Assembly (NCBI GenBank): GCA_002104945.1
Contig: MCFH01000070.1
Span: forward strand, 1-64,000
Direction of reading: 5' to 3'
Origin: Piromyces finnis finn
Taxonomy: Eukaryota; Fungi; Neocallimastigomycota
Length of the DNA stretch: 64,000 nucleotides
Part shown: piece after piece, positions 1-42,431 of the stretch
How positions within the stretch are numbered: the stretch's first letter is position 1
Layout: each line of letters opens with the position of its first letter
Made by a program: the position numbers and the translations under genes
The notes under the pieces: generated by a model
The model's input: only the letters and a program-made list of their open reading frames with translations
What the model was told of the DNA's origin: nothing
The model's database searches: none

Positions 1-849
1 TTTTTTTTTTCAATTTTTTTACCTATAGAGTAATTATAATTTTCATTACTACTATTATTACTATAATTAGTAATAGGGTTAGTATTATACAAATAAAATG
101 ATAATAATGATTATAAAAGAGATAAAGAAAAATAAATTAAATTAAAAAGGAGGGAAAAAATTTTTAATAAAATAATACACTGTTTTTTATTTTTATTTTA
201 TTTTTTTTTTTTTAAATAGAAAATAAAAATTAATTCGTTTATAATATTTAATAATAAAAAAAGCAATAATAATGGTTCAATAGAAAAAATTATGGATTTT
301 AATGAAATAAAAAACAAAGCAAAATAGAAATTAATAAAATCCATTAAATACTCATAAAAAAAAAAATTAATTAAAAAAAATATATACTAAAATAAAAATA
401 ATTATTATATTTTTATATATTAATACAAATATAATAATTTAAATAGCATATTTAATACTGTATTTTAAAACAATAATATAGATAGATATAAAAATAATAA
501 AAATAAAAAAATAAAATTTACATATAAAAAAAAAGTTAACATATCTTTATATAATTATTAATTTGTTTTATTTATTAGGATTCTTTTTTTTTTTTTTATA
601 GGATTTACAAATTTACTATATTTAAAAATTTTATAAAAAAAAATAGAAAAATTTAAACATTAGAATATACTTTTTTGTTTGTTTTTTACTTATTTTATTT
701 TATAATAATAATGAAAAAATAAAAATAAAAAAGCAATAATAAATATATAAAAGTGAAGAAGTCAAAAATAAAAAAAGAAAAAAAAATTAAAAATAAAATT
801 GTATAGTAACTCTCAATATAATGATACTGCATTGATACATCCTCCTATT

Positions 850-1039
850 CCTACCTAATAAATAAAATGGAATATATATATAAAAGGATCAAAGAATGAT
901 AGTATCAATCTACCATGAGTTATGATTTCCTATATTGTAGAATTATTAACATTAGACTTGGACACTTTCAACAGGACATTTAGAATGTTTCTTTTCAATA
1001 CCGGTATAAAATAGACATTCTTGATTTCATTTGATTTCC

Positions 1040-1045
<6 letters not shown>
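850..1045 (-). pseudogene. Decayed 3' relic of the older LINE family (downstream half; interrupted by the young element)
   Basis: Minus strand reads DRKSNEIKNVYFIPVLKRNILNV, against DR...IKSADVVPIWQRNILNV in the old element at ~45505-45580. Shared DNA anchors: ttgatagg, aatcaaga, aacattct, aactcatgg, actatcat. Confidence 0.65.
1033..1045. repeat. Target-site duplication (left copy) GATTTCCTATCAA
   Basis: Identical 13-mer directly abuts the poly(T) at 1046 and recurs at 6737-6749. Confidence 0.93.
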
Positions 1046-1089
<44 letters not shown>

Positions 1090-1324
1090 GGCATCAAATA
1101 TTTTAAACTTTATTATTAATTTAATTAAAATTATAATACATGAAATATAAAAATTAAAATAAAATAAAAATAAAAAAAATATGTTTAAATAAACACAAAT
1201 GAATAAAAATTGGGTATAATGTATTCTAGTAATTTTAATTAAAGTAAGAAAGCCACTATCATACTAAAGTATAATAATTGTATTTGACTTCCAATGGGAC
1301 ACCGAGCCAAAGATCAAAATTTTG

Positions 1325-4300: not shown

Positions 4301-5848
4301 GGAAAGTTCATCTGTAGAAACATTAGGATCGTTGGATTTAGCTGAAAGTATTTGGAATTTATTATGACTGAGAATAGATTCCTTTTCCTCAATACATTTT
4401 AATCTATTCCATTTCAGAATTTTCTTAGGAACATTAAAGTCATTAGAAAAATCTTCCATAGGAATAATTTTACCATTAATAAGAAGTGGCTTATGGTCTG
4501 ATACAGGATAAAAATTATTTATAAATGATCCTGAGTGAATAAGATCTTTCATCTTCGAATTGATAAGAGCATGGTCAATGTCGGAAGATTGATCACCTCG
4601 AGTCCAAGAGATAGTAGACCCTCTAAGCGGAAGAATTTCCCAATCTCCTAATCCATTAGTTGATAACCAGTTGGATAATTTTACTTTAGACATATTAAAA
4701 TCACCAACAAGAATCGATGGATGGGATGAATGAGTTTGTAACCACAAGCGAACTTCTAACTTTGCATGATCAACATAGATGTTGTGATGACTATGAGGCA
4801 TATAAACATTACCAATCGAGCATTTGAATCTATTCCAGAGACTAAAAGTATAAATAGAAATAATATACTTTCCAGAGAAGTTTTCAAGTGAGGCTTGACA
4901 TGAATTGTGAAAACCTAAATATAAACCTCTCATTCCCGGAACTGATTCGTCAGCTTTCTTGAAAAAGTGTCTATAGTTTCGCAAAGTAACACGACAAGGA
5001 TAATCTGTATTCGATCCAGAACCATTACCAGTTTCTTGGAAACATAAAAATAATGGTTTGAAAATAGCTGTGAAATAGCTAATACTATCTCTCTTTTCGT
5101 GATTCCACCCATTGGTGTTCCAACTAAGACAAAAAGAAAAGTTATCAGGCTTGTTGGATGAGGAAGAATCGTTGCTATTATTATTATTATTAAAGTCATC
5201 GTTATTAATGGATGATGCATCAGAGGAATAAGTAGAACTATTACTAGATGGCTGTGAAACTGAAGAACTATCAACTATTGAACTGTTATCAGAGTTGATA
5301 GAGCTATTAGAATTAATTGTTGAATGTTGAGATTGAAATTGTGTTTGCTGTAGATCTGGAATATTTTCATGATTGGAAACTTGTTGAAGATCTTGTTGAA
5401 GATCTAGTTGAAGATCGGATTGTTGATGAGATTGTTGAACTGATTGTTGAAATGATTGTTGAATAGAATGTTGATGTTTATTAGAAACTAAAATTTTACG
5501 TTTGAGAGTGGAAAAAGTGTATTTGTGATTCCTTCTACTACGAGCTGAAAAGGAAATTGAGGTAACTGAAAGTTTCTTCTTTAACATGTGTAAGATTTTA
5601 ATACAATCTTTCGATGAACCATGAACCTTGACTAAGAAAAAGTGATCATTGAAAGTCTGAAAATATTTAACACTAATAACTGAATTAAATTTATCTTCTA
5701 GAATAACCTCGAGTTTTTCCCATAGCATATTTACTGACCATGATCGAATACCACGGATAAAGAAGGAGCGAATATCATCTAAGGGGATACCATAAGACCG
5801 GGTACCACGTCTGATATAATTCTTGTCTTTAATATAAAGGACTGACAT
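1325..5848 (-). CDS. Non-LTR retrotransposon polyprotein: N-terminal domain, Q/S/N linker, APE endonuclease, reverse transcriptase, C-terminal Cys/His zinc motif
   Basis: APE motifs SWNTNG, FQET, GDFN, SDIDH, SDHKPL; RT motifs GPDG, NYRGISL, EQFGFR, FLDLRKAYDSV, QGCPLSP, LFADD, YLGV; C-terminal CPCCKC...HWLLDC. Confidence 0.96.
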   Translation of the reverse strand: MSVLYIKDKNYIRRGTRSYGIPLDDIRSFFIRGIRSWSVNMLWEKLEVILEDKFNSVISVKYFQTFNDHFFLVKVHGSSKDCIKILHMLKKKLSVTSISFSARSRRNHKYTFSTLKRKILVSNKHQHSIQQSFQQSVQQSHQQSDLQLDLQQDLQQVSNHENIPDLQQTQFQSQHSTINSNSSINSDNSSIVDSSSVSQPSSNSSTYSSDASSINNDDFNNNNNSNDSSSSNKPDNFSFCLSWNTNGWNHEKRDSISYFTAIFKPLFLCFQETGNGSGSNTDYPCRVTLRNYRHFFKKADESVPGMRGLYLGFHNSCQASLENFSGKYIISIYTFSLWNRFKCSIGNVYMPHSHHNIYVDHAKLEVRLWLQTHSSHPSILVGDFNMSKVKLSNWLSTNGLGDWEILPLRGSTISWTRGDQSSDIDHALINSKMKDLIHSGSFINNFYPVSDHKPLLINGKIIPMEDFSNDFNVPKKILKWNRLKCIEEKESILSHNKFQILSAKSNDPNVSTDELSKEFTSTAFSIADELSITSANNVIKSSFHISQQIFNLQKIKMKLYKRFKKERIYDIDEFIKRIKIYRKLIDYIHKRCNEFRKQEYLHWIKTGCEYMKSHNPKKAWKWIKKTAKIGKDSFFIAQPIKNKNGELVVATEEQLDVWHDHFEKLASDPSGVSLDLEHWYEEPMNKRFSLPMLDEWDINQDISIDEVKSAILTTPNYKASGPDGIPIEFYKALVPSSNDSNNATDNNSSGNTTSDNDAHGLNFILKLFNRIWDGDFPNSWNESSIVSIPKKGDLTDCDNYRGISLINNGIKLISKIVTTRISEYGLKNNFIRPEQFGFRKKEESISLFISIQEICRRRQLDNKETYLAFLDLRKAYDSVPIGNILHKLDCLGIRGKSLQFIKNLYLTSKANVKLDGQFSKSFDVKKGVRQGCPLSPILFNLFINDIFRECEDLGVSLGDTRCCGGLFADDIVICAPTRGCLKKMLRRVNEWALYNEMEFGIQKCSTMVIRPESIENQNKRDPTFYLAGQPIPTTDCYTYLGVPFDKNLSLKPVIKALNNKVLKGLFSVSKFLRNPNIPIPFKKLVLNSQVISRVSYFAPLLGSNKARSRIAQKHVNKGIRWVAGVHKAVSFISLYSISKDLNIPPLSAKCALAQVRCFNKWKNSNCIISHLVNYIPKFRKYTWCKSSRTLDKKLKKHGDVKAVKNFYWKDLKGNSIKAQYYDDNKFSETKDFIKLCYEYPEFAYGFYWLLKARSGYKLDARVAKAAKFVDPVCPNYCPCCKCGDQSIKHWLLDCPTFRDIRIKHYDSIVQLLNFFSQRNSNSPINNNEIDNISRDSNNINSNSNNSNSNNSNSNNSNSNNSNNNNNRNNNISNDSNSEDNNSNLDSNLVNDSNSSNNPVNINVYDYSSVCSKIFKFLLGGRSFNNINYNSREWKELCKRQIQSGTNEGAPFLTVTAELLTKIMPFAIGQQWSMFKRFEATSKSVNAEETVRQARRASATNGDHNFVP
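1766..1830. repeat. 15-bp coding minisatellite (NSNNS repeats) inside the LINE ORF
   Basis: actattgttactatt repeated about 4 times. Confidence 0.8.
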
Positions 5849-6490
5849 GATAATAAATTCTAATTAAAAATATTGAATATAAAATAAATACTAATAAAAA
5901 TTATAAATATAACGTATATGGAAAAAAAATCTGTCTCTCTCTCTCTTCTTAAAAGTACTGGATAGTACAAAAATTGTTACGATGCTTTGTTTAAAGTTTC
6001 TTTTTTTGAATTCTAGTTGTAAATTTTCTTTAAAAATTCTAGTTTTGGTTTGTTGTTAGTAAATTCGATTCGCTTTTTGACACTAAACTTGTTTGACTTA
6101 CTTTTCATTAAATATTTAAATTGGTAAAAAATTTGAATCAAGAATGTCGACACCAGAAAGCTTGTGAATAGTATTTTTACATGATGTAGAGTGAATCAGT
6201 CTCTTACAAGAAACAATACAACAATAGCTACATGAATATAAAAATACAATGCAAATGCTAAAGTTGACTACATTGGATTCTTACAAGAGAAGAGTAGTAC
6301 TACATGAATACATGAATAAAAGAAAAAATACAGCAACAAAATGTATTACTCTTCTAATTAAATACTATACAAACTTACCTGAATATCAAACATTCAACTT
6401 ATTCATCAAATACTTAAATTCGATGGATAAATGTTTTTTAATCGCTCAGTACCATGAGCTTAGTCCTAATAATTTTCCCTTAAAGACTAA

Positions 6491-6735
6491 CCAAGCATCC
6501 ATTGCGCAATGCTTGGATTTAATTCTTCCTACTCTCTCAGTACCATGAGCATGAGTAGACCCCCTTGAGAAACTACATTTATTAAATAAATGAAGGCACG
6601 TTTCCAAGAGGGCACCAAGCATCCATTGCGCAATACTTGGATTTAATTCTTTCTACTCTCTCAGTACCATGAGCATGAGTAGACCCCCTTGAGAAACTAC
6701 ATTTATTAAATAAATGAAGGCACGTTCCCAAGAGG
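6491..6735 (-). repeat. Two 124-bp-period tandem monomers at the 5' end of the LINE
   Basis: 6491-6611 and 6615-6735 differ by 3 transitions. Each contains the palindrome ATTGCGCAAT and several hairpins. Confidence 0.92.
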
Positions 6736-6736
6736 A

Positions 6737-6749
6737 GATTTCCTATCAA
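6737..6749. repeat. Target-site duplication (right copy) GATTTCCTATCAA
   Basis: Identical to 1033-1045; marks the element 5' end at 6736. Confidence 0.93.
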
Positions 6750-6880
6750 ATAAAAAAAAAAAAAAAAAAATCACAAAGCTGTTAATACAAAATCATTTGT
6801 TTTGTTTTGTTTTGTTTTTTAGTAAAAAACGACTTTAAGATTTTATATATATAGGTAGTATGAGATCCTGTTGATTATAT
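6750..6880 (-). pseudogene. Decayed relic of the older LINE family (upstream half)
   Basis: Minus strand caacaggatctcat...ttttttactaaaa...attaacagctttgtga aligns with catcggggtctcat...ttttcttactaaaa...attagtagctctatga at 45413-45492. Confidence 0.6.
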
Positions 6881-8200
6881 ATAAAAAATATTTTAAACAT
6901 TAATGCACTTATGTGTAATTGGGACTAGATATTTCCAATACTACAAAGAATTTTTAATCTTGGACACTTTGTAATTCAATAATTAACCTAAAGATCATTC
7001 TTACATTATAGAAAGTAAATAGACTAATAAATATATATATTTGTTTTTGTTTTTGTTTCCGTTTTTTTGTTTTTTGTTTTTGTTTGATTTTATTCTTTAT
7101 TTTATTATATGTGATATATATGAAATGTGATAATATCTTCATTTTTTTAATCTCTTTCTTTCTTTTGGGTTTATTTTTATTTTTAAATAAAAAAGAAATT
7201 ATTTTTTTCTTTTATTATCATATAATAGAATTTTTTCTATTACCATTTTTTTTGTGTTTCTTCATTTCTTTTTTTTTTTTTTTGCTTTTGATTATGCTTT
7301 TCTCTTTTTTTTTTTTTTTTCCAAAAAAAAAAAAAATTAAACAAAATAAAATAAATAAAAATATGGGGATAACTTTTTTATTTTATTTTTTTTTTAATGT
7401 CATATTAAATAATAAATATTATATTTATTTAATATTATTATTTTTAATAGTCATTAAAAAAAACTTTTTATTTCCATATATTTCTTCTCTTTTTTCTTTC
7501 TTTTAATAAATTTATAAAAAAATTAAAAATATTTCTATTACTAAAATAAGTAAATTAAATATACTAAAATGAGTTTATATATTATTCATTCTAATCATTC
7601 CTATTCATGCATTTTTTTTCTACAAAGAAATTGCAACAAAAAATATATATTAATCTAACTATGGTAAGAACTTTTAATAAATAATCCACTTAATTATTAT
7701 TATTCTAGTTGTTGATTATTATTTATACTATTATTATTTATAATTACTGTTGTTGTTTTGTGTTGAAAATTATAATATATATTTCATTTTCTTTATATAA
7801 ATATTATAAAGTAATAAAACTTTTTATTCAAGAAAGAAAGAGGAAAAAAGTATTACTACCTATATAAAATCTATAAAGTGTAATTAAAAATTCCAAAATA
7901 TTTATCAAACTATTTTAACTAAATTTATATATTCTAGAATTTCTTAAAATATATCAAAATAGATAAATTCATTTATATTTTAAGTAAATAAATCTTAAAA
8001 CTGAAATTTAGTTTATATTGTTGTTTAAATATTATTGTCATTTTTTATTGTTTATGAACTAAAAAAAAATAACTGAAAATATTATATTAAAATGAAAAAA
8101 TTAAATTGGAAACAAAAATTATAAAGTATTTACATCATTGCAATAAACACTTTATAATAAAGGGAAATTTATTATTTAATTAATGATTAAATTAAATAAT

Positions 8201-10139
<1,939 letters not shown>

Positions 10140-13100
10140 TTTTTCTATATAATTATAAATTTGAAATATTATTTATATATTAATATATTGTTAATTATGA
10201 TAAAATAATTGTTATTAAAAAATAATGTTTATTAAATTTAATTCTAAACTCCTTTTCTATCACATCTTAATAATATTCATCTGTCTTTTTTATTACATTT
10301 TCCTTTTTATTATAATAATACATATTGAATTTAATAATTTGATATTAATCTTCCACATTTTGCCATTTTAAAGTCTATTATTTTTTTTACATTCTTTAAT
10401 CAATGATAATGTTTACTTTTGGTTTAACATTTATAAAATGTCGCTTAGAATTAAAAAAAAAGATTGTTTTTGAATTTTTTTATCCAATTTATTTTTGAAT
10501 TTTTATGATTAATTTCTCAACATGTTCAATGATTTGTTTATTACAGAATTTAATTCGCAATAAGTTTAAAGTTCAACAACAATTCAATAATTTCTTTATT
10601 TTCCCACTTACTTTTTTTTTTTTAAATCTAAATTAACAAAATTTTTTTTTTTTTATTTTATATATATAAAAATCTTTTTATAGACTATTTAACTAGTTTT
10701 TAAAAAGATTACAATTAATAATATTAAATATAAAAATATTTAATAATTTTTTTTTTTTTTTTATATATTTATTAAAAGAGACAAGAGTAGAAAAAAAAAA
10801 TTTTCTGATACTGAAAAACTTTTATTAAAATAAAAAAAAAAAAAAATTGATGTTTTTCATTGGTTAAAAATTATATATCCATTTAAATTTATTTGTATAA
10901 AACAATATTTTCTAACCCTTTAATTTTTATTTAATTAAATTAATTATCTATCAGTAAATAAAAAAAATATTTTATACAATCAAATTAGAAACTATATATA
11001 TATAATATATAGAGAAATGTATTTTTAAATAATATGGAATATACATACAATATAAAATAATATAATATAAATTAAATTACATCAAAAACATCCAAATATT
11101 AAAGTTTTATTGTATATATTTAAAAATGTACATTATTATATTATATTATATATTGTGTAATACGTAATATATAAATTATGTAAATATCTAAATATTTTAA
11201 TATAAAAAAATTAATTTAAAGTAAATCTTTAAATTCTATTTATAATAAAAAGCTATATTATCCTACATTACTTCCAGAATTTAATTTAAATATACTATAA
11301 AACAGCTACTCTACTAAATACAATAATAAATTGAAATTAACCTAAATCATAATTACATTATAGATACTTATTCCTCCTTTGAAAATTTATAAAAACCTCA
11401 TTTGCTTCCTTTTTTTTTTACATATTCTAAATAGACGACGTAATTAAAAAAATCCACATTTTATTAAATTATTATAATATAATAAATTTAATAAATTATT
11501 AGCCAACCATTATGTAAATGCCACAAAAATAAGTGTTATTAAAATTAATTTTTGATTTATTATAGTTTTGAATAATAAAAATTGAATTAATAGGTAGAAT
11601 ATCATTTTTTGTTGTTGATAATTTTTACATCCATAAAATTTACATCTAAATCTCTACTAATTAACAATGATGATAACAAATTCTACTTCAAAACCTTTTT
11701 ATAGGAATTAAATATGTTTATTTAAAATTTTTTATTAATTTATATTGTAATGCATAAATGAATTAATTAATCTGAAAATAATGTTGATAAAAATGAAAAT
11801 AAATAAAAGAATAATTATTTTAATTTTTATTACTTTTTCCATATATACATTTTTTTTAAATAAAAAATCAGAAAAATATTATATATATTTTTATTGGATT
11901 TTTAAAAATTATATAAATTTACTATTAATTTATAATTATTACTATTACAGCTTTAATATATAAATAGTTTATTACATCACAGTCTTCATTATTCCTTGTC
12001 ATTCTAAAATGACTAATATTTTATATTAATCAGTTGTTTTATTTTTGTTATAATTGAGAATGAAAATTAAATCTATATTTATAATGAAAAATATTTAAAC
12101 TCAGATATAAAATATGTAAAATTATATTTATATTTTTACATTAATTTATATACAACGTACATTTTTTAAAAAATATATATTTACATCAATATTTTAAAAT
12201 ATGAAATTACAATATTTGGTGATATTGAATATATAAAATATTGAAGCTATAATGGACTTATTCAAGCCACATATGTTTATATAATGAATAGTTTAAGCTA
12301 TTCATTTCGAAAAATAAAAATAACTTCATATACTTTAAAAACAGTATTCTTAAAGTATAATGTAATCAAGTTGACTATATTAATTAAATTTTACTTATTT
12401 ACTTATTTTGTATTTATTAAAATGTTAATATGCAACTTAAAAATAACTTTCTTTTATAGATGTATAATCTTAATGTAACCAGTTTATTTTTTAGTTGGAA
12501 AATAAAGCGTATCTTAGAGAAAATTTATAGAAAATCTTTTAAAATTTTAATAATTTTTAATATAACTATAATAAATAAAAACCTTAAAAATTTTCCTAAA
12601 AAGAAAGAGTTGCTTAACTTAATTTGTATGTTTATTAAAAAATTCTGATACATTCTCATATCCTTTTATATATATAATAGTAATAATAATAGTAATAATA
12701 ATAGTAGTAGTAGTAGTAGTAGTAATAAAATACTATTGGGAAATTTTTAAAAAAAATAAGGAAAAATAAGGAAATAAATATGTATAATTAAAAAATTAAT
12801 AATGAAATATTTCTTACCTTATTTAAAATAAATTTCTATATTCATTTAGGTAGAAATTTATTTAAATAGTTATATTTAAATTTTTTAATATAATTTTTTG
12901 TGTTTTTTTTTTATTAGAATTAAAAAAAAAAATAAAAATAAATATTTTAAATATTAAACTTATATATTTCTAAAATAATATTCATACATGAATTGAATAT
13001 ATTGAATATTATTTAATTGTAATCTTTTTGAAAAATAATTCTTTAAAAATTATTAAAATAGATAAAATATATTGTAAGTATAATTATTTAATATTCATTT

Positions 13101-13303
13101 CAATTTTATCAAATGTAAATAAAATTGTATAGTTAAATTATTATAAAAGCTTTTATTTAAAATGCAATTTAACAATAAATTTATATGAATAAATATTTTA
13201 AATTATATAAACATTGAATTAAAATAATGTATACATTGATATAATAAAAATGTTTTAATAATAAAGTTATATTTTTAAAGAATTAAATTATTCATTATTC
13301 ATT

Positions 13304-33066: not shown

Positions 33067-36000
33067 CTACAACCTTCCACTCTTGACACCAATTGAAGTA
33101 GTTCCCATAGAGGCAGAACCAATAGTTGAGTTGTAAGCTTCGCTTTGACTTTGTGAAGTTGAAGAATATTGAGAAGGAGTCATTTGAGTAGTAACATTCT
33201 TCATCTTTGGTTTTAAAATAAATAATAAACAACACCAAGTACTAACAAGAGTAGCTAAGCAATTAATGGTCATTGAAACAGTTGGATCGAATGAACCCAA
33301 GTTTTGTAATACAATAACTAAAACTTCAATAATGAAATATACATATGTAGATAATACAATAGCCTTAGTTTCATTGAAAGCTGATGGGGCATTACGAGCA
33401 GTATATGCAGCATGAACAGCCCAGAACAAAATTGCAAATAAAAATACATCACCAATAATTGAAGTAGTATGACTATCACATTTCTGGAACTCTTTTTCTG
33501 CATGCGTGTCTTCAACCATTTTCGCCTTATCAACAGTAGTCCAAATAATAAGAAGAATAATAAATGGAATTAATATACCGAATAAATATACGATTAAACG
33601 TCTGTCAGCTAATTGAGAACCACCAATTTTCTTACCAGAGAAAATCAAAGAAATACGAATTGTCTTAACAATTAAAGCACCAACCATTAATGAGAATCCA
33701 ATATATTTACACCATTCTCGTAAAATACAAATAGTAATTGAATCATTTCTACTTTCTAAAATAATAGTTCCACTGTTACATACAGCACCAACTGTCATAA
33801 TCATTAAAAAGAGTGGTGAAGAGGAACGAACATGTTGAAGATTACGTCTGATGTAAAGCATTAAAATAAGAACACAACATAAAATTGCACTTGTAATACC
33901 AATAATAAGGAACATATATTGAAGCCATTTTGGTACCACAAATTTCACTCTATCATTACAGTTTGGACCTTCCCAATTTTCAGCACATTTACATTCGTTT
34001 AAATCAACACATTCACTACCAACATGAAGACAACCACCAGGACAGTCTGGAACGTAGCATGATTTTAAAAGAGTATTGGTAATATCTTTATATTTTGATC
34101 TATTACATGGATTTATATTGATATCAATTGAAGCATAAGCATTAATTAAAGTATCAAATTGCCAGTTTTCATTTTCGATAATAGTAAAATTAAGTGTGTA
34201 TTCACCATTATCACCAATAACTTGGAATTCATTAGCAGGAATTGAACAAGTACTATTGGCAAGGTTACATCTCCATCTCTTCTTACCATAAATAGTTGAA
34301 GTCTTTGAAGATTCACTAGTATTGTTTCTATCTACAATAATAACAGTAATAAAAAGAGCACCTTCGTTTGTTTTTTCATCATTCTTGGATTTGAAGTTGG
34401 TTCCATTGAAAGTTTTAATACCTAACATAAAGGAGTAAGGAATCCAATCACCAGATAATGTTTGAATTTCTAGATTTTCAGTTGTAGCATATCTTTCGAA
34501 TATAACGGATGAGTTAATATCATAACAATTAGTATCAGGGAAAACATCAATATCTTGTTCATTAATTTTACGTAAGAAATTGCTATGATACCAAACATTT
34601 GTTTTGTCATTATTAAATGCTTCTGGAGATAAGATGTATTGTAATTCAATTAATAAAGTATTAGCCATTGGTAATAAATGTTCATCCCAGACAGCATTTT
34701 TCTGTATTTTAGGATAGATGTTGGTAGTACTAGATTTAAATCTATAGATATTGTTATTTTTACAATAATTAAATTCATCACAATTAAGAATTTTTGAATT
34801 AGACATAAATGTACTTTTATCTTCATTAACACCAATGTCTGAAATATCAATAACAATATCAACAGAATTATCTACAATATCACTGAAATCACCAGTTTTA
34901 GTGGTTGGTGTAAATATTGATGCACCAGCATCTTCAGTTAAAATACGATAGAAATCGGAAGTTTTATAGGTCCACTTATTTTTGCTTGTATTGTATGATA
35001 CCCACGCAATAGTTTTTTTATCAGAATTAGAATCTTTTTCTTTTTTAATTACATCTTTTAATTCATTGTAATCTTCAATGAGAATATTAAATAAATCATC
35101 AGCTAATTTTTCTTCGTTATAAAATAAAGATACATATTTGATCCATTCAGCTCTAGCAAGTGGGGATTCTTCAGAAATTGCATTAAATGGAACACTGTAA
35201 TATGTTGATTCACTATCACCTAAATTTCCATAAACACTATTAGTAATTTCACCAAAAATTACACTAGAAGAGGTTAATTGACTTAAAAAGTCATCAGCCT
35301 TATCTGGGGTATAATCTTCAATAATATCAGTATCATACATATATTGAATACAACGAGATGAAGTTGATTTGATATCCTTAAATTCATTAATTGTTGATCT
35401 TTTATCTAATAACTATTATAAAATAATAAATTTTTTAGTCACTTCATTATGAATTATACTATCTAAAAAATAAACTTACTTCAATATATGGAATAACAGT
35501 TTTGTCATAAATACCAACTGTTTCGATTGGAATCTTAATAATATGTTTATCATCATATTCTTCTGGAAGGTTATCACTATCAATACCATCTTGAATAAGA
35601 AGGAATTTTTCATCATTAACTGTAACAACTTTAGTGAAATTTCCATATTCAACACTAAAATGTTTAGCATATTCAACTTTAGTTTGTCTTGGGAAATAAT
35701 AAGTTGAATTTTTACTATCAGTAACTGTATATAATGGATTATCTGAGGATGAATGAGCTGCAATAACAGATAATAAATCAATTTGGTTTGGTTGATAACC
35801 GAATTCACCAGCATAGTATTTAGCATTGTTATTAATGGACTCATAATTGTCAAGTATTGGTACAGTAGTTTCGTTAATACAAATACCAATACCACCAGCT
35901 TCCGCATAGTTATTTTCAAATAAACTATTTCTAAACACAGTACCTTTCTGTGGATTACTATTTTCACCAATGAAATATACACCACCATATTCAGCTGAAT

Positions 36001-39000
36001 TATTTAAAAATTTACAATCATCAAATAAAATGCTAAAATCAGTTTTCCAACTTTCATCACGAACTAAATGAGAGTTTCTTGACATAGCTAAAACACCACC
36101 TTTTTCTGCTTGACAATTTTTAAAATAACATTTTTTAATATCTAATTTTCCACCAAAATCACCAAACCAAAAAACGCCACCATATTCAGTAGCGACAGAT
36201 TTACTTACTAAAACATTGTTCAAATATAATTGAGGCTCATGCTTGATAAAGAATAAACCACCATTATTAGCTCTACTATTAGAAATTTGACTATTATTTA
36301 TCTCTAAAGCAGCAGTATGAATTAATGAAGCAAATGAACCAGTATCAGTTCCTTCACAATTCTTAACTTCTTTATCTTTAGGACAGAAACCAATATTTTC
36401 AAAAGTTGAGTCAGTAATCTTACACCAAGCACCAGTTTCCAAATTTAACATACCTATCATTGATTAATTTTCCAGTTTATTAATTTACTTTAAAAAAATA
36501 ATGTTTATAGTATAGTATAAAATTATTTTATTATAATTATTACTACTTACTGGAAGAACTACTGATACCATTAAATGAACAATTATCTATAATTAATGGT
36601 GTAGGATCTTGACTTAACGCACCAATATAAGAACGAGTTATAATTGTTTCTTTCGCGTATAGATCCTATTCATTATTATACATAATATATATTTATATTC
36701 ATTATTCATTAATCCTTAAAATAGACTATTTCAGTTAATTATACGATTTATACCTTAAATTTTGTATTATATAACTTCAATTCACCATATGACTGTACAT
36801 TAAAAACTATAATTTAAACATTTATTATAGAATGAATTTTCAGTTTCTATAACTATTCCAATAAAAAAAATTCAAATATTAAATTTATTGTTAATTACCT
36901 GTAGATTTACAAGAAAAATCTTGGAATTCACTATTACTTATTTGAACTGTATTCATTTTAATATTGAATGCAGGCTAATACAATTAAAAATATATATATA
37001 TATGATGAATTAAAAATTGTTAATATAATATTACTTTAGTAAATATATTCAATTATTTGTAATTACCAATGATTTTTTATCAGCATATCCACCTTGACTA
37101 ATAGAATTTTTAATTTTTAAGTTATTAATATTTATATCTATTAATTTATATATAATATTTGTTAATGAATATTTATTTATTAAAGCTAATTATGTTATTA
37201 TTTGTTATATTATTTTCACTGACTACTTACTACATTGAGATTCAAGAATACCATCAAATACTGAATCTTCAATTATAAAGTTTTCAATGCTTGAACCAGT
37301 AGCTTGTTCAATATTAATAATAGTACCATTGGAATAAAAATCTTTAACATTCACATCAGTGAAATTTACTTCAATCTTACTTAAAAACATAAAACTAAAA
37401 ATATTTATATAATAAATAGTTATTATATAATTTCGTTTGATTCCAATCTTTTAATAAAATATAAAACCCGTATTACCTTGGTTTCTAATTATTTATAACA
37501 GTAAGAAGATTAATAATTTAATATTAAAAGGAATTATTTAATAATGAATATATTAAAAGTCTAATATTAATAAGTTAAATACTATAAATATATATAATAT
37601 TATATATTTTATTTTATTACAATATCTTCTGTCCATCTTGGATCTCTTCCACCAGTAAGCTTGATATCATTTAAAACTACCTTTACATTTTCTCCATTAA
37701 CTATAAAAGTTTTATTTTTATTATTAGTGATCGGTTATTTATTTTTATGGTTAGTTAATTATTAATAAATTAGTAAGTTAAATACCAAATATATCACGTC
37801 CTTCACTGTAACTAAAATTATTTTCTAATGTAACATTTTTGAAATTAACTAATGGATATTCGAAATATAAAGACATATATATAGCACCACCTTTTTTCAA
37901 TTATTTATGTATTTATATTATTTTAATTGAAATAAAATAAATTAATCTTATGTATTCTTAAAAGTTAATTAAATACTATAATATAATATATAATAAGATA
38001 AAATAATATATACCTTGTTCATTAACTGCATTATTTTTAAATAAAGTATTTTCTACAGAAAATTCTCTTGCATTACTAACATAAATGGCACCACCATACA
38101 TAGCTCCAGGATTATGACCATATTCTTTATATTTTGATGTCTCTTTATCATTTAATGCCATATCATGATCACGAAATATACTATTCATAATATTACATTT
38201 ATGTACATTATAAATATACATTCCCCCAGCAGCATCTTTAAATTCAGTATTATTTATATTGATATCTTCACCAGAATCAATATATAAATTATAATTTTTA
38301 CATTCATTATCCTTAGGACATCCATAAAATCTTGAATTATTGATATTTACATTACAATTGCCTTCAATATTTACAATACCCTTATCAAGCTGACCATTGT
38401 TTGTAATATTAAATGAATCATAAATAATATCATGAAAGTATGTATTTTCAAATTTAATATAAGTTTGTGTGGCTGCAGTAATGGCAGCTATATATATTGA
38501 TATAACGATATATAAATAATTCATTTATTAACAATAACATTAGTATACTAAGTAAATATATATTAATTTAAAATAACAATTTAGCTTATTATAATGTTAA
38601 AATATTAATTTAATTATTAATAATATTTACGAATTTTCATATTAAAGAAATCACAACTAGTAAAGTTTATTTTTGTTGATTCTACCTATTGATTATGTGA
38701 ATATTGCAATTTTTAATATTAACAAGTATTGTAATTATTTTTATATTAAAATGAGACTAAAATTTTTACTTTAATAGCAGAAGTAGTAGTACTTTTTACA
38801 TCACAATTTCTAAACGATAAATTTTCGAATTCAATTAAGCCTGAGCATCCTTTTATATTAAAAATAGTTTTTTTATTATTATCTGGGCACTCAAAAAAGG
38901 TTTTATTTGTTCCCTGACCTATAACTTTAAAATGACCCATGACATTCATTATAGAGAAATTAGGTGTATTCTTTTTTATTCTATCAGTACTTGTTGCTGG

Positions 39001-39219
39001 ATAAAAAATAGTTCCTTCACCAATAGTAATTACACAATTATCATTTACTGTATTGTAGTTACTATTTAAATTTGTTGTTGAAAAAAAGTCATCTATTTCC
39101 TTATTAACTTTTACTCCATTACAAACAATTTCAACTTTTGCTGTGCCATCACCAAGTACACATCCTAGCACTGTTATTAGTACTAATGAGAATACTCTCA
39201 ATATTATATTTTCTTTCAT
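33067..39219 (-). CDS. Large class-C-like GPCR: signal peptide, right-handed beta-helix (pectin-lyase-like) repeats, type III (BtuF/Fe-siderophore) substrate-binding domain, EGF-like module, 7TM; 13 exons, 1656 aa
   Basis: Phase-consistent exons: 38770-39219, 38631-38685, 38014-38487, 37786-37890, 37621-37700, 37477-37484, 37231-37394, 37067-37137, 36899-36974, 36754-36806, 36551-36665, 35480-36453, 33067-35412. Repeated F.N.A..GGA motifs; EESPLARAEWIKYVSLFYN; CECKCAENWEGPNC; RSSSPLF, LIVKTIRI and PSAFNETK 7tm_3-type motifs. Confidence 0.85.
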
Positions 39220-40629: not shown

Positions 40630-42431
40630 ATGGCTACTAAGTCTGTTGATGCTTGGGTAAATAGTTAAAAAGAATTGAATTAAGATGTTTTAATAATTAT
40701 TAAAAATAAGATATAAGACATATTATTCTAAATAAAGAATGAAAATAAAAATAATGAAAATAAAAAGAATGAAAATGAGTTGCTAAATTTTTTTGAAATT
40801 GAAAAAGTATTAATAATGAATATTAATAATTTATTGATTTATATTAATTATTTGTTATAACAGAACACTTGTTTAAACGTTCCACTTAAGGAAGAAGATC
40901 CAGAAATCTACGACATCATTGAACAAGAAAAGATTAGACAATGGAGTTGTTTAGGTAAGGATAATTAATAAAAAATAATAATTTCTAAAATGAAGAATAT
41001 CGAATTAATATGTAAACAAATATATAATAATTTCAATTTAAAATAACAGAATTAATTGCTTCTGAAGTATGTATAATGAGTTAATATAATTTTTAAATAA
41101 ATTAATTAATAAATAAAAATAAATTTATTAATATGTATATAAAATTAAAATTAAAGAACTTTACTTCTCAAGCTGTTATGGAAGCTAATGGTTCTGCCTT
41201 AACTAACAAATATTCTGAAGGTCTTCCAGGTGCTCGTTACTATGGTGGTAATGAATACATTGATATTTTAGAAAGATTATGTCAAGAACGTGCCTTAAAG
41301 GCTTTCGATTTAGATCCAACTAAGTGGGGTGTTAACGTTCAACCATACTCTGGTTCTACTGCTAACTTCGCTGCTGTTATGTCAGTCTTAGAACCACACG
41401 AAAGACTTATGGGTCTTGACCTTCCATCTGGTGGTCACTTATCTCACGGTTATGCTACTCCAAAGAAGAAGATTACTTCTTCTGCTGTTGTCTGGGATTC
41501 TATGCCATACCGTGTTGACCCAGCTACTGGTTACATTGACTACGATAAATTAGAAGAAAATGTTGCTCTTTTCCGTCCAAAGTTAATTATTTGTGGTGCT
41601 AGTGCTTATCCACGTGAATTTGATTACGCTAGATTAAGAAAGATTGCTGATATCAACAACTCTTACTTAATGGCTGATATTGCTCACATTAGTGGTCTTG
41701 TTGCTGGTAAGGAAGCTGCCAACCCATTCGAATACTGTGATATTGTTACTACTACTACTCACAAGACTCTTCGTGGTCCACGTGCTGGTCTTATCTTCTT
41801 CTCTAGAACTAGTCCAAGAAATGATAAATTAGAAGCTGCCGTTAATGCTTCCGTTTTCCCAGGTGCCCAAGGTGGTCCACACAACAACACTATTGCTGGT
41901 ATTGCTGTTGCTTTAAAGCATGCTGCTTCTCCAGAATGGAAGCAATACGCTCAACAAATCCGTAAGAACTGTGCTGCTATGGCTGCTAAGCTTAAGTCTT
42001 ACGGTTACAAGATTGTTACTGATGGTACTGATAACCATCTTATTCTTTGGGATTTAAGACCAAATGGTTTAACTGGTAGTAAGATGGAAAAGATTTGTGA
42101 TTTCGTTAACATTACCTTAAACAAGAACGCTGTTCACGGTGACCGTAGTGCTGCTGTTCCAGGTGGTTGCAGAGTTGGTGCTGCTGCTTTAACTTCTCGT
42201 TCTCTTAAGGAAGCTGATTTCGAACAAATTGCTGATTACTTAAACCGTGCTACTAAGATCGCTTTAAGAATTCAAGAAAAGACTGGTAAGAAGCTTGTTG
42301 ACTTCGTTGCCGCTTGTGCTCAAGATGAAGAAGTTAAGGCTTTACAAAAGGAAGTTGAAGCTTTCGCTCGTTCCTTCCCAATGCCAGGTTTCGACCCATC
42401 TAAGATTGATTTAGCCAAGTACTCTCACTAA
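40630..42431 (+). CDS. SHMT: Serine hydroxymethyltransferase (no presequence, probably cytosolic), 4 exons
   Basis: [48 protein letters not shown] (PLP lysine), GGPHN, GTDNHL, NKNAV. Confidence 0.97.

What the first reader, a model, noticed from the sequence alone, without database searches (positions are those of the whole stretch)
33067..39219. GPCR fused to a bacterial BtuF/siderophore-type binding protein and beta-helix repeats: candidate B12 or iron-chelate sensor
Manual splicing joins five separate ORFs into one 1656-aa protein. Order: signal peptide; ~800 aa of beta-helix repeats; then YFPRQTKVEYAKHFSVEY...KIPIETV...IPYIELL...EESPLARAEWIKYVSLFYNEEKLADDLF...KTIAW, which follows the pattern of bacterial helical-backbone (class III) ABC substrate-binding proteins for cobalamin, haem or Fe-siderophores; then an EGF-like module and a class-C-like 7TM. 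Anaerobic-fungal GPCRs with pectin-lyase or sugar/amino-acid SBP ectodomains are known in general. A metal-chelate-type SBP combined with a beta-helix in one receptor would point to sensing of microbially made cofactors in the gut via a horizontally acquired domain. The SBP/EGF/7TM part is almost intron-free while the beta-helix part is intron-dense, consistent with modular assembly. Ligand identity is inference.
Basis: partly seen in the sequence, partly recalled or inferred. Interest (0 to 1): 0.82.

Follow-up and report, generated by a model that had tools for sequence, protein, structure and literature searches.

The report
Fungal GPCR carrying a B12-binding-type domain
An anaerobic gut fungus encodes one large cell-surface G-protein-coupled receptor whose outer part contains a relative of the algal vitamin-B12 uptake protein CBA1, so it is a candidate sensor for B12-like or haem-like molecules in a fungus that has no B12-dependent enzymes.

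Summary
Window 33067-39219 (minus strand, Piromyces finnis) is one gene of 13 GT-AG exons, including an 8-nt microexon. A 70%-identical, intron-free 1647-aa ORF on two metagenomic contigs matches it end to end, so one mRNA carries all modules.

Order of modules: signal peptide, about 767 aa of right-handed beta-helix, a 381-aa class III substrate-binding (SBP) domain, a strongly conserved 150-aa linker of unknown fold, an EGF-like knot, and a class C 7TM (PF00003, E 7e-36).

The SBP call is confirmed by fold (pLDDT 90; VIA Z 17 to CeuE, YiuA, PhuT and FepB) and by profile, although Pfam misses it.

The correction: this is not a recent bacterial acquisition. It lies inside the eukaryotic CBA1 (cobalamin acquisition protein 1) family, and its closest relatives are stand-alone proteins of early-diverging fungi. 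Grouping with prokaryotes is disfavoured (AU p 0.043).

Prokaryotic relatives sit behind cobalamin riboswitches or next to CbiZ or BtuR, which supports a corrinoid ligand for the family. Neocallimastigomycota are reported to have no cobalamin-related enzymes, so sensing fits better than uptake. Haem or porphyrin, the known triggers of zoospore release, is the main rival ligand. The ligand remains inference.

The parts
33067..39219 (-). Whole coding region of the receptor gene (13 exons, 1656 aa plus stop). Exons: 39219-38770, 38685-38631, 38487-38014, 37890-37786, 37700-37621, 37484-37477, 37394-37231, 37137-37067, 36974-36899, 36806-36754, 36665-36551, 36453-35480, 35412-33067
Evidence: Splice model with all introns GT-AG. 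The last 1180 aa are identical to annotated P0001.
39151..39219 (-). Signal-peptide-like N-terminus (aa 1-23, MKENIILRVFSLVLITVLGCVLG)
   Evidence: Hydrophobic segment at aa 5-23, Kyte-Doolittle 2.5. The orthologue P0203 begins the same way. No signal-peptide predictor was available.
35735..39150 (-). Right-handed parallel beta-helix region (aa 24-790, exons 1-12, intron-dense) with repeated FxxN...GG(A/V)(I/V/L) motifs
   Evidence: AF2 model of P0001:1-895 shows strand triplets over residues 1-290. VIA-align gives Z 23.1 to the Vag8 passenger and Z 18-20 to polysaccharide lyases and tailspikes over residues 1-315. PF13229 Beta_helix scores 35.9 bits in orthologue P0203. Only the C-terminal 315 aa of this region were fold-tested.
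37477..37484 (-). 8-nt microexon AAACCAAG (encodes K-P and the first two bases of S)
   Evidence: It is needed to reproduce the 'TEDIKPSFMFLSKIEV' of the intron-free orthologue P0203. It is flanked by AG and GT.
35480..35722 (-). CBA1-family class III SBP domain, first part (aa 795-875; start of the N-lobe), in the same exon as the end of the beta-helix
   Evidence: Profile, fold and tree evidence.
35413..35479 (-). Intron 12 (67 nt, GTAAGT...AG), the only intron in the 3' 3.4 kb; it splits the SBP domain between IPYIE and LLDK
   Evidence: The junction is confirmed by P0001 and P0203.
34513..35412 (-). CBA1-family class III SBP domain, second part (aa 876-1175; rest of the N-lobe, the 26-residue backbone helix, the C-lobe)
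   Evidence: AF2 pLDDT 90.2, pTM 0.90, helix at domain residues 182-207. Foldseek probability 1.0 to CeuE, FepB, FhuD and PhuT. VIA Z 16-17. 38 of 61 family-conserved columns are identical.
34060..34512 (-). Conserved beta-rich, cysteine-containing linker module of unknown fold (aa 1176-1326)
   Evidence: The stretch tested (P0001:695-895, which also spans the EGF-like module) is 79-91% identical between genera, against 51-69% for the SBP domain. No Pfam hit. AF2 pLDDT below 50. Not folded on its own.
33946..34059 (-). EGF-like cysteine knot (aa 1327-1364, CYVPDCPGGCLHVGSECVDLNECKCAENWEGPNCNDR)
   Evidence: Contains C-x-C-x5-G-x2-C. Pfam EGF_TEN and EGF_PEAR1L hits are sub-threshold. EGF_2 scores 19.9 bits in P0203, cutoff 22.1. 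AF2 pLDDT about 73.
33205..33921 (-). Class C seven-transmembrane domain (aa 1373-1611)
   Evidence: PF00003 7tm_3 at 124.7 bits, E 6.7e-36. phmmer to GABA-B2 E 1e-12 and to mGluR2 E 1e-11. Seven hydrophobic segments.
33067..33204 (-). Ser/Thr-rich cytoplasmic tail (aa 1612-1656) and stop codon
   Evidence: Translation. Nearly identical in P. sp. E2 and N. californiae.

Best explanation
SHOWN. This is one gene for a class C G-protein-coupled receptor. It occurs as one orthologue per species in each of the five sequenced Neocallimastigomycota strains recovered (four genera). Its ectodomain of about 1340 aa reads, from the N-terminus: signal peptide, long right-handed beta-helix, a class III (rigid-helix) substrate-binding domain, a very conserved Cys-containing linker, an EGF-like knot, then the 7TM. 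The binding domain is a diverged member of the eukaryotic CBA1 family (cobalamin acquisition protein 1). It is related to stand-alone, membrane-anchored CBA1-like proteins of early-diverging fungi, and more distantly to prokaryotic BtuF-type binding proteins of corrinoid ABC importers.

INFERRED. An ancestral fungal surface CBA1 was fused in front of a class C 7TM, taking the place of the usual Venus-flytrap domain. The domain still binds a tetrapyrrole, most likely a corrinoid (B12 or another cobamide, or cobinamide made by gut bacteria and methanogens). Occupancy is relayed through the conserved linker and EGF module to the 7TM and a G protein. The lineage is reported to have no B12-dependent enzymes, so the receptor would read corrinoid as an environmental cue (microbial neighbours, site in the gut) and not as a nutrient. 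Class III SBPs move little on binding, so the relay probably depends on a small change in lobe tilt, on docking of the loaded domain onto the linker or the 7TM loops, or on ligand-dependent dimer rearrangement. A large clam-shell closure is unlikely.
For: Single gene and single mRNA:
- 13 GT-AG exons give 1656 aa.
- An intron-free 4.9-kb ORF that is 70% identical over the full length lies on two JGI contigs with AT-rich UTR-like ends.
- One orthologue each in P. finnis, Piromyces sp. E2, N. californiae, A. robustus and Orpinomyces.

Class C 7TM: PF00003 E 6.7e-36; GABA-B2 and mGluR2 hits in the PDB.

Class III SBP fold: AF2 pLDDT 90.2; Foldseek probability 1.0; VIA Z 17.3 to 4hn9 and YiuA, 16.8 to the haem-binding protein 2r79.

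CBA1 family:
- The orthologue profile finds 1547 proteins. The top stand-alone hits that could be labelled are Umbelopsis, Sorochytrium, Apophysomyces, Allomyces and Borealophlyctis proteins, at E 1e-36 to 1e-32.
- The first 124 residues of Allomyces hit P0021 match the start of the sequence listed as the Allomyces CBA1 homologue in the supplement of PMC10828217.
- Some relatives pass the Pfam Peripla_BP_2 gathering score.
- Of the 16 residues that PMC10828217 lists as conserved, 11 are identical and 3 conservative here. Three of the four residues placed around the modelled B12 are kept: W255, W394 and E396 correspond to W218, W323 and E325.
- 38 of 61 family-conserved columns are identical, against 24% overall identity.

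Not a recent bacterial gene: the prokaryotic set is one side of a 99/90 branch in 100% of bootstrap trees, with the gut-fungal clade on the eukaryotic side; AU p 0.043 against joining them.

Corrinoid link for the family:
- CBA1 knockouts in Chlamydomonas and Phaeodactylum cannot take up B12 (PMC10828217).
- Prokaryotic relatives P0179 and P0175 lie directly downstream of cobalamin riboswitches (50.5 and 54.4 bits). P0175's operon ends with CobA/BtuR.
- Methanogen relatives P0168 and P0178 sit in CbiZ...SBP-FecCD-ABC...CbiK clusters.
Against: - No binding or signalling data exist for any fungal member.
- Neocallimastigomycetes are reported to lack all eight cobalamin-related proteins (PMC8085122), so there is no obvious need for B12. 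Land plants also keep CBA1 homologues without B12 enzymes, and PMC10828217 suggests a changed function there that still binds a tetrapyrrole.
- Two of the 16 conserved CBA1 residues are changed: P251 to K, and the pocket residue F395 to D or N.
- A cysteine pair conserved in the family (domain positions 45 and 198) is lost.
- BtuF itself is not among the top 50 structural matches. Those are mostly siderophore and haem binders. By sequence profile, the nearest solved proteins are Lmo2184 and the haem binder IsdE.
- The gut-fungal clade sits on a long branch, and its exact sister within eukaryotes is unresolved.
- I could not put the Chlamydomonas or Phaeodactylum CBA1 sequence itself into an alignment. 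Membership rests on the Allomyces link and on motif spacing.
- The beta-helix could be the true ligand-binding part.
Confidence: 0.45

Rival explanations
1. Same receptor architecture, but the CBA1-type domain has shifted to haem or free porphyrins. On this reading the receptor detects the water-soluble haems and porphyrins that induce zoospore release in rumen fungi.
For: [quoted passage not shown] No paper read here names a receptor.
- The lineage lacks B12 enzymes (PMC8085122), so a change of ligand is plausible.
- PMC10828217 proposes a different tetrapyrrole for plant CBA1 homologues.
- Haem binders are among the best structural and sequence matches: PhuT 2r79 Z 16.8, RhuT and HmuT Z about 15, IsdE E 1.9e-4.
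- The pocket residue F395 is changed to D or N.
- The receptor is conserved across the sequenced genera recovered, with one orthologue in each species.
Against: Three of the four B12-proximal family residues are retained. No axial-ligand Tyr or His typical of haem SBPs was identified here. The family's only experimental and genomic links are to corrinoids.
Confidence: 0.2
2. The SBP-like domain no longer binds a small ligand. It serves as a structural or transducing spacer, and the beta-helix binds plant or microbial polysaccharide, which is the real signal.
For: [quoted passage not shown]
- The beta-helix here resembles polysaccharide lyases and tailspike depolymerases (Z 18-20).
- The SBP domain is the least conserved module of the ectodomain between genera (51-69%, against 79-91% for the linker).
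- A family cysteine pair has been lost.
Against: Family-conserved positions, including the pocket tryptophans and glutamate, are invariant in all gut-fungal orthologues. That pattern argues for a preserved binding site and against a mere spacer. The beta-helix also matches non-enzymatic adhesin passengers best (Vag8, Z 23.1), so carbohydrate binding is itself unproven.
Confidence: 0.18
3. The domain binds a ferric siderophore or another metal chelate, giving an iron-chelate-sensing GPCR.
For: Most of the top structural matches are siderophore-binding proteins: CeuE, YiuA, FepB, FhuD, BauB and HtsA. IMG automatic names for relatives read 'iron complex transport system substrate-binding protein'.
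Against: Structural rank within class III SBPs does not track ligand. The automatic names are generic for PF01497. The specific subfamily is tied to cobalamin by riboswitches, CbiZ and BtuR and by CBA1 genetics (PMC10828217). No Fe-coordinating Tyr/His/Arg basket was identified.
Confidence: 0.07
4. The SBP domain was recently acquired from gut bacteria by horizontal transfer and fused to a resident GPCR.
For: Anaerobic fungi carry many bacterial genes, and PMC5168858 suggests HGT for their Type II SBP homologues. The SBP domain is as similar to prokaryotic SBPs (23-31% identity) as to eukaryotic CBA1-like proteins (20-29%).
Against: - The best profile hits outside the clade that could be labelled are fungal.
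- The prokaryotic sequences form a separate side of the tree (99/90; 100% of bootstraps).
- The AU test disfavours a prokaryote-plus-gut-fungus grouping (delta lnL 39, p 0.043).
- The domain contains a spliceosomal intron and shares an exon with the beta-helix.
Confidence: 0.05

Closest known systems
Non-canonical class C GPCRs of anaerobic gut fungi (Seppala et al. 2016, PMC5168858)
   Same: Same organisms (P. finnis was one of the three strains studied), same 7tm_3 core, very long ectodomains, pectin-lyase/beta-helix repeats and an occasional EGF-like module, no ANF/Venus-flytrap domain.
   Different: That study reports only Type II (sugar-type) SBP domains, beta-helix domains or 'no InterPro domain'. 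SSF53807, PF01497 and IPR002491 appear in none of the supplement text held here. Here a Type III / CBA1 domain sits between the beta-helix and the 7TM. Pfam still does not detect it.
CBA1, cobalamin acquisition protein 1 of algae (Bertrand et al. 2012; Sayer et al. 2023, PMC10828217)
   Same: Same sequence family by profile. Same class III SBP fold with BtuF-like topology. 14 of the 16 listed conserved residues are identical or conservative, including W255, W394 and E396 around the modelled B12 site.
   Different: CBA1 is a stand-alone protein of about 450 aa with a signal peptide and at most one TM helix, and it is needed for B12 uptake. Here the domain is embedded in a 1656-aa GPCR, in a lineage reported to lack METH and every other cobalamin enzyme. 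F395 and P251 are changed. No Piromyces, Neocallimastix or Anaeromyces entry appears in that paper's tables.
Prokaryotic BtuF-type binding proteins of corrinoid ABC importers (Peripla_BP_2, PF01497)
   Same: Homologous domain (profile E down to 1e-74 for the family profile) and same fold. The relatives sit with FecCD/ABC genes behind cobalamin riboswitches or next to CbiZ or BtuR.
   Different: Those proteins deliver ligand to an ABC permease. Here the domain is covalently tethered to a 7TM receptor and no ABC partner is implied. E. coli BtuF itself was not among the top structural or sequence matches.
Metazoan class C GPCRs (mGluR, CaSR, GABA-B, taste receptors)
   Same: Homologous 7TM (E 1e-12 to GABA-B2). 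Same general logic of an SBP-derived ectodomain, then a cysteine-rich relay, then the 7TM.
   Different: Those use a Type I SBP (ANF / Venus flytrap) with large hinge closure and, except GABA-B, the nine-cysteine NCD3G domain. Here there is a Type III SBP with a rigid backbone helix, an unrelated conserved linker plus an EGF-like knot, and an extra 767-aa beta-helix.
Haem-binding class III SBPs (IsdE, PhuT, ShuT, HmuT, RhuT)
   Same: Same fold (Z 15-17). IsdE is one of only two solved proteins that the family profile finds at E below 0.001 (E 1.9e-4). The ligand is a tetrapyrrole.
   Different: No closer sequence relationship was shown, and no haem-ligating residue was identified.

Membership tests
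Class C (family 3) GPCR | 7tm_3 (PF00003) domain above the Pfam gathering score | tested here: met
   124.7 bits against a cutoff of 33.5, E 6.7e-36, profile positions 8-251 of 251.
Class C (family 3) GPCR | Seven membrane-spanning segments after a large extracellular N-terminus that begins with a signal peptide | tested here: met
   Hydropathy scan finds an N-terminal segment at aa 5-23, seven segments at aa 1367-1599 (1647-aa model numbering) and none in between.
Class C (family 3) GPCR | ANF_receptor / Venus-flytrap (Type I SBP) ligand domain and NCD3G nine-cysteine domain (typical, but not universal: GABA-B lacks NCD3G) | tested here: not met
   No ANF_receptor or NCD3G hit even at E up to 1-10. 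They are replaced by a class III SBP, an unknown linker and an EGF-like knot. [quoted passage not shown]
Class III / cluster A substrate-binding proteins (Peripla_BP_2, PF01497) | Pfam PF01497 match above the gathering score (27.5 bits) | tested here: not met
   No hit for the P. finnis domain. Orthologues reach only 18.3 and 15.0 bits. Homologues found with the orthologue profile do pass: P0021 32.1, P0011 34.4, P0015 30.2, P0043 37.9 bits.
Class III / cluster A substrate-binding proteins (Peripla_BP_2, PF01497) | Two alpha/beta lobes joined by a single long rigid helix | tested here: met
   AF2 pLDDT 90.2 with a 26-residue helix at domain residues 182-207 between two beta/alpha lobes. Foldseek probability 1.0 with 153 PDB hits at E up to 0.001, all of the top 50 being class III SBPs. 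VIA Z up to 17.3 over 272-284 aligned residues.
Class III / cluster A substrate-binding proteins (Peripla_BP_2, PF01497) | Works with a FecCD-type ABC permease | not testable with these tools
   The domain is covalently part of a GPCR. The genome outside the 64-kb window could not be searched.
CBA1 (cobalamin acquisition protein 1) family | Significant profile similarity to proteins classed as CBA1 homologues by the published CBA1 HMM | tested here: met
   The profile of gut-fungal orthologues hits Allomyces AMAG_15988 (P0021) at E 5.9e-33 in 1.84 billion proteins. The first 124 residues of P0021 match the start of the entry 'Fungi_EP00129_Allomyces_macrogynus' in the supplement of PMC10828217.
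CBA1 (cobalamin acquisition protein 1) family | The 16 conserved residues listed for CrCBA1 (K78 P118 L136 E206 F214 F215 N216 E218 P251 V253 W255 G289 W394 F395 E396 D408) | tested here: inconclusive
   Mapped by motif and spacing onto domain positions K31 P65 L83 E170 F178 Y179 N180 E182 K214 I216 W218 G244 W323 D324 E325 E337. That gives 11 identical, 3 conservative and 2 changed. The first three were checked against the CrCBA1 N-terminal text. The rest rest on spacing, because CrCBA1 was not available by reference.
CBA1 (cobalamin acquisition protein 1) family | Placement inside the eukaryotic clade and not among prokaryotic PF01497 proteins | tested here: met
   Careful ML tree: the prokaryotic set is one side of a branch (99/90; 100% of bootstraps) with the gut-fungal clade on the other side. 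AU p 0.043. Position within eukaryotes is unresolved.
CBA1 (cobalamin acquisition protein 1) family | Stand-alone secreted or anchored protein required for B12 uptake, co-occurring with B12-dependent METH | tested here: not met
   Here the domain is internal to a 1656-aa GPCR. Absence of METH and other cobalamin proteins in Neocallimastigomycetes is taken from PMC8085122 and was not re-tested. Uptake function is not testable here.
Right-handed parallel beta-helix (pectin-lyase-like) | Beta-helix fold and/or a Pfam Beta_helix match | tested here: met
   VIA Z 23.1 (7akv Vag8) and Z 17-20 to PL6/PL9 lyases and tailspikes over model residues 1-315. PF13229 scores 35.9 bits (cutoff 25.9) in orthologue P0203. 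There is no Pfam hit in the P. finnis pieces themselves, and the N-terminal 475 aa were not folded.
EGF-like domain | Six-cysteine EGF signature and a Pfam EGF match | tested here: inconclusive
   C-x-C-x5-G-x2-C is present in CKCAENWEGPNC. All Pfam EGF hits are sub-threshold (E 0.022; EGF_2 19.9 bits against 22.1 in P0203).

The most novel reading that the evidence does not exclude
This receptor, found as one orthologue in every sequenced Neocallimastigomycota species recovered, is the unidentified sensor for an extracellular tetrapyrrole that controls the anaerobic-fungal life cycle. The ligand would be either the haem/porphyrin signal long known to trigger zoospore release, or corrinoids used to detect methanogen and bacterial partners. 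It would be the first G-protein-coupled receptor shown to use a class III (BtuF/CBA1-type) binding domain, and the first GPCR for a B12-like molecule.
Probability: 0.25. Interest if true: 0.9.

Novelty: new variant of a known kind. Interest (0 to 1): 0.72.

Why it matters
Class C GPCRs are textbook examples of a bacterial-type binding protein wired to a 7TM. Every characterised case uses a Type I domain, and gut fungi were known to add Type II domains. A Type III, rigid-backbone domain in the same position would show that all three SBP architectures have been recruited. It also raises a mechanistic question: how does a domain that hardly closes drive a 7TM?

Biologically, it offers a concrete and testable candidate for tetrapyrrole sensing in anaerobic fungi. 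Haem and porphyrin induction of zoosporogenesis has been known since the 1980s, and no paper read here names a receptor for it. Corrinoids are abundant products of the bacteria and methanogens these fungi live with. The finding also extends the CBA1 story. A B12-uptake protein family survives in a lineage that lost B12 metabolism, apparently repurposed as a sensor, much as the unexplained CBA1 homologues survive in land plants. Practically, a ligand-gated switch for zoospore release would help cultivation and engineering of these biomass-degrading fungi.

Tried and rejected
1. Direct sequence searches of the SBP region gave nothing usable. I tried Pfam, NCBIfam, phmmer against the PDB, and an 8-sequence profile against the PDB. 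The only signal was sub-threshold Peripla_BP_2 hits in two orthologues. The domain became identifiable only through the exhaustive profile search and folding.

2. My first splice model (1647 aa) used a wrong acceptor for intron 5. Alignment with P0203 exposed the missing 9 residues and the microexon.

3. Recent bacterial HGT was considered and disfavoured.

4. A gene-fusion artefact was rejected because of the intron-free full-length orthologue and the concordant models in five species.

5. The word-indexed search with the family alignment returned only prokaryotic SBPs. That reflects word selection, not a closer relationship.

6. A cobalamin riboswitch was absent from the Methanolacinia and Geitlerinema loci but present in two others.

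7. The linker module (aa 1176-1326) stayed unassigned: no Pfam hit, and AF2 confidence below 50 inside the 895-aa model.

8. Profile search of the beta-helix against PDB sequences found nothing. NCBIfam gave only a weak AIDA-type autotransporter hit. Structure comparison settled the matter.

9. I looked for stand-alone CBA1 genes of Neocallimastigomycota among the top 150 hits by amino-acid composition. The AT-rich-looking stand-alone hits I could place (P0097, P0138, P0149, P0187/P0188) fall on the prokaryotic side of the tree. P0041, P0201, P0094 and P0146 were not resolved.

10. The peptide was not found in the supplement text of PMC5168858.

11. I could not bring the Chlamydomonas or Phaeodactylum CBA1 sequences into the session by reference, so no direct alignment to them was made.

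Full report
**What is at the locus**

The window is Piromyces finnis DNA. The 781-aa translation of the 3' exon is 100% identical to NCBI protein BCR36DRAFT_374703 (P0001, 1181 aa). The region is extremely AT-rich: exons have about 25-33% GC and spacers 9-17%. The gene lies on the minus strand.

From the three-frame map and the sequence I built a splice model. I corrected it after aligning to an intron-free orthologue. The final model has 13 exons, listed under 'parts'. All 12 introns are GT...AG and 67-143 nt long.

One exon is an 8-nt microexon (37484-37477). The public gene model starts at an internal Met in exon 9. It therefore lacks 475 residues, including the signal-peptide-like N-terminus (MKENIILRVFSLVLITVLGCVLG). 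A hydropathy scan of the first, 1647-aa model finds that N-terminal segment, then seven segments at residues 1367-1599, and nothing in between.

**One transcript, conserved across the phylum**

A search restricted to the SBP region returned one orthologue each from P. finnis, Piromyces sp. E2, Neocallimastix californiae, Anaeromyces robustus and Orpinomyces, plus metagenomic copies.

One of these, P0203, is a 1647-aa protein encoded by an uninterrupted ORF on two JGI contigs of 5.2 kb. The contigs have short AT-rich flanks. P0203 aligns with my spliced protein from Met1 to the C-terminus at 70% identity and crosses every exon junction.

An intron-free copy, in a lineage whose genomic copy has 12 introns, is best explained as assembled mRNA.

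**Domain by domain**

- **7TM.** PF00003 (7tm_3) scores 124.7 bits, E 6.7e-36. The best solved relatives are GABA-B2 and mGluR2 (E 1e-12 and 1e-11).
- **Beta-helix.** An AF2 model of P0001:1-895 gives regular strand triplets over residues 1-290. VIA-align against 48,161 PDB representatives returns right-handed beta-helices over residues 1-315: Vag8 passenger Z 23.1, and PL6/PL9 lyases, alginate epimerases and phage tailspikes at Z 17-20. Orthologue P0203 passes Pfam Beta_helix. The further 475 N-terminal residues carry the same FxxN...GGxI/V motifs but were not folded.
- **SBP domain (P0001:320-700, model aa 795-1175).** Pfam, NCBIfam and PDB sequence searches fail. They show only sub-threshold Peripla_BP_2 hits in two orthologues. 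With a 61-sequence alignment, AF2 gives pLDDT 90.2 and pTM 0.90, with two alpha/beta lobes joined by a 26-residue helix. Foldseek finds only class III SBPs at the top (CeuE, FepB, FhuD, PhuT, RhuT; probability 1.0). VIA-align gives Z 16-17 over about 270-280 residues.
- **Linker (aa 1176-1326).** It has no family match and was modelled with low confidence. The stretch tested (P0001:695-895, which also covers the EGF-like module) is the most conserved ectodomain stretch compared between genera, at 79-91% identity.
- **EGF-like knot (aa 1327-1364).** It has the C-x-C-x5-G-x2-C signature, with only sub-threshold Pfam EGF hits.

**What kind of class III SBP**

A profile of the gut-fungal orthologues, searched without a word index against 1.84 billion representatives, found 1547 proteins at E up to 0.001. 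After the gut-fungal cluster itself came multi-domain metagenomic and algal proteins. Next came stand-alone proteins of about 440-490 aa at E 1e-36 to 1e-32.

All of those stand-alone proteins that carry a name come from early-diverging fungi: Umbelopsis, Sorochytrium, Apophysomyces, Allomyces and Borealophlyctis. They have a signal peptide and a hydrophobic C-terminus.

The first 124 residues of the Allomyces protein (P0021) match the start of the entry that Sayer et al. 2023 list as the Allomyces homologue of CBA1, cobalamin acquisition protein 1 (PMC10828217 supplement). That paper shows that CBA1 knockouts of Chlamydomonas and Phaeodactylum cannot take up B12. It also shows that the AlphaFold model of CBA1 resembles BtuF, and it lists 16 conserved residues.

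I mapped those residues by motif and spacing, checking the first three against the CrCBA1 N-terminus printed. The Piromyces domain keeps 11 of them identically and 3 conservatively. It keeps W255, W394 and E396, three of the four residues placed around B12. P251 becomes K and F395 becomes D or N. Overall, 38 of 61 family-conserved columns are identical, although mean identity to the family is only 24%.

**Origin**

The family profile also retrieves prokaryotic 'ABC transporter substrate-binding proteins' with PF01497, from cyanobacteria, Methanolacinia and many metagenomic sources. HGT therefore had to be tested.

- In a 195-row quick tree, the prokaryotic sequences fell on one side of a well-supported branch.
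- In an 82-row careful PMSF tree, that branch has 99/90 support and appears in 100% of bootstrap trees.
- Every labelled eukaryote falls on the other side, together with the gut-fungal GPCR clade. These include fungi, the nucleariid Parvularia, diplonemids, Amorphochlora and Pinguiococcus.
- Forcing the gut-fungal clade to join the prokaryotes costs 39.3 log-likelihood units, AU p 0.043. This is a marginal but consistent rejection.
- The clade sits on a long branch. Its sister changes between analyses (diplonemid N-domains in one, Parvularia in the other), so I claim only 'eukaryotic CBA1 side, probably vertical from a fungal CBA1'.

The exon structure gives no support for recent modular insertion. 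Exon 12 encodes both the end of the beta-helix and the first 81 residues of the SBP domain, and intron 12 lies inside the domain.

**Ligand**

Independent genomic evidence ties this SBP subfamily to corrinoids. Five distinct prokaryotic neighbourhoods were examined.

- Two methanogen loci read CbiZ, chelatase-like AAA/VWA, SBP, FecCD, ABC, NifH/CbiA-like, CbiK.
- One locus has the SBP-FecCD-ABC operon followed by CobA/BtuR.
- That locus and one more carry a cobalamin riboswitch directly upstream (RF00174, 54.4 and 50.5 bits against a gathering score of 31.5).
- The cyanobacterial locus has neither feature.

Together with the algal genetics, this makes a corrinoid the default ligand for the family.

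Against a simple nutritional role, Orlowska et al. 2021 report that none of four Neocallimastigomycete proteomes has any of the eight cobalamin-related proteins, and that P. finnis uses MetE (PMC8085122). Land plants show the same paradox, and Sayer et al. suggest a changed function there that still binds a tetrapyrrole.

For anaerobic fungi a specific alternative exists. [quoted passage not shown] Haem-binding SBPs are among the nearest solved relatives: PhuT Z 16.8 and IsdE E 1.9e-4 by profile. I therefore rank the ligands in this order: corrinoid, haem/porphyrin, no small ligand (beta-helix as sensor), siderophore.

**How it probably works (inferred)**

The receptor would sit in the plasma membrane with a 1340-aa ectodomain. 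The CBA1-type domain is the membrane-proximal ligand-binding unit. It occupies the place of the Venus flytrap of other class C receptors. The conserved linker plus EGF-like knot occupies the place of the cysteine-rich relay.

Class III SBPs are built around a rigid helix and move little on binding. Signalling is therefore more likely to use a small lobe re-orientation, docking of the loaded domain, or a ligand-dependent dimer rearrangement. The distal beta-helix may bind polysaccharide or act as a stalk through the cell wall. None of this was tested.

**Novelty**

- Gut-fungal class C GPCRs with beta-helix or Type II SBP ectodomains are published (PMC5168858). The Type III identifiers SSF53807, PF01497 and IPR002491 do not occur in that paper's supplement text.
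- No Neocallimastigomycota entry occurs in the CBA1 paper's tables.
- No paper in the library combines CBA1, GPCR and vitamin B12.

I rate this a new variant of known kinds: a known receptor class and a known binding-protein family, in a combination and biological context not described before.

The scan's earlier notes near this locus concern LINE elements elsewhere in the window and did not bear on this finding.

Noticed in passing
window 41133-42431 (+): The neighbouring ORF is a serine hydroxymethyltransferase (PF00464, E 1.6e-165), read as an uninterrupted 432-aa ORF. Its GC is 0.38-0.44, far above the 0.25-0.33 of the receptor's exons. It could be a highly expressed gene or a foreign-derived one. 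A one-carbon/folate enzyme next to a putative B12-type sensor is probably coincidence.
   Followed up: partly
window 37477-37484 (-): An 8-nt microexon (AAACCAAG) flanked by AG and GT. The orthologue's cDNA-like sequence requires it. The P. sp. E2 annotation reads this stretch differently (TEDIVMIIFIFMFLSK).
   Followed up: yes
window 36953-39219 (-): The public gene model BCR36DRAFT_374703 is truncated at the N-terminus by 475 aa (exons 1-8 and the signal peptide are missing). The N. californiae, A. robustus and Orpinomyces models are truncated in similar or worse ways.
   Followed up: yes
P0090 (EukProt protein g581.t1, 1310 aa): A CBA1-like domain at the N-terminus (residues 12-387) is combined with a C-terminal protein kinase domain (PF00069, E 4.9e-29). 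This may be a receptor-kinase-type use of the same binding domain in another eukaryote.
   Followed up: partly
P0165, P0012, P0011, P0013, P0015, P0029, P0033, P0050, P0037 (metagenomes, Diplonema, Lacrimia and others); also Amorphochlora P0014: Many eukaryotic proteins carry two or three tandem CBA1-like domains in one polypeptide (800-1700 aa). Their function is unknown.
   Followed up: no
L003 and L006 (Methanolacinia petrolearia and a related methanogen), 700-13200: Conserved cluster: CbiZ, AAA/VWA chelatase-like pair, AP-endonuclease-fold protein, CBA1-related SBP, FecCD, ABC ATPase, NifH/CbiA-Oxidored_nitro pair, CbiK. It looks like a corrinoid (or F430-related) salvage and remodelling island.
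   Followed up: partly
window 34060-34512 (-): The unassigned linker region between the SBP and EGF modules is more conserved between genera (79-91% over P0001:695-895) than the SBP domain (51-69%). It contains conserved cysteines (RWRCNLANSTC). It may be a new relay domain specific to these receptors.
   Followed up: partly
P0039 (1230 aa) and P0115 (979 aa): CBA1-like domains lie at the C-terminus of proteins that also carry ankyrin repeats or a homeobox. These are probably merged gene models and not real fusions.
   Followed up: no
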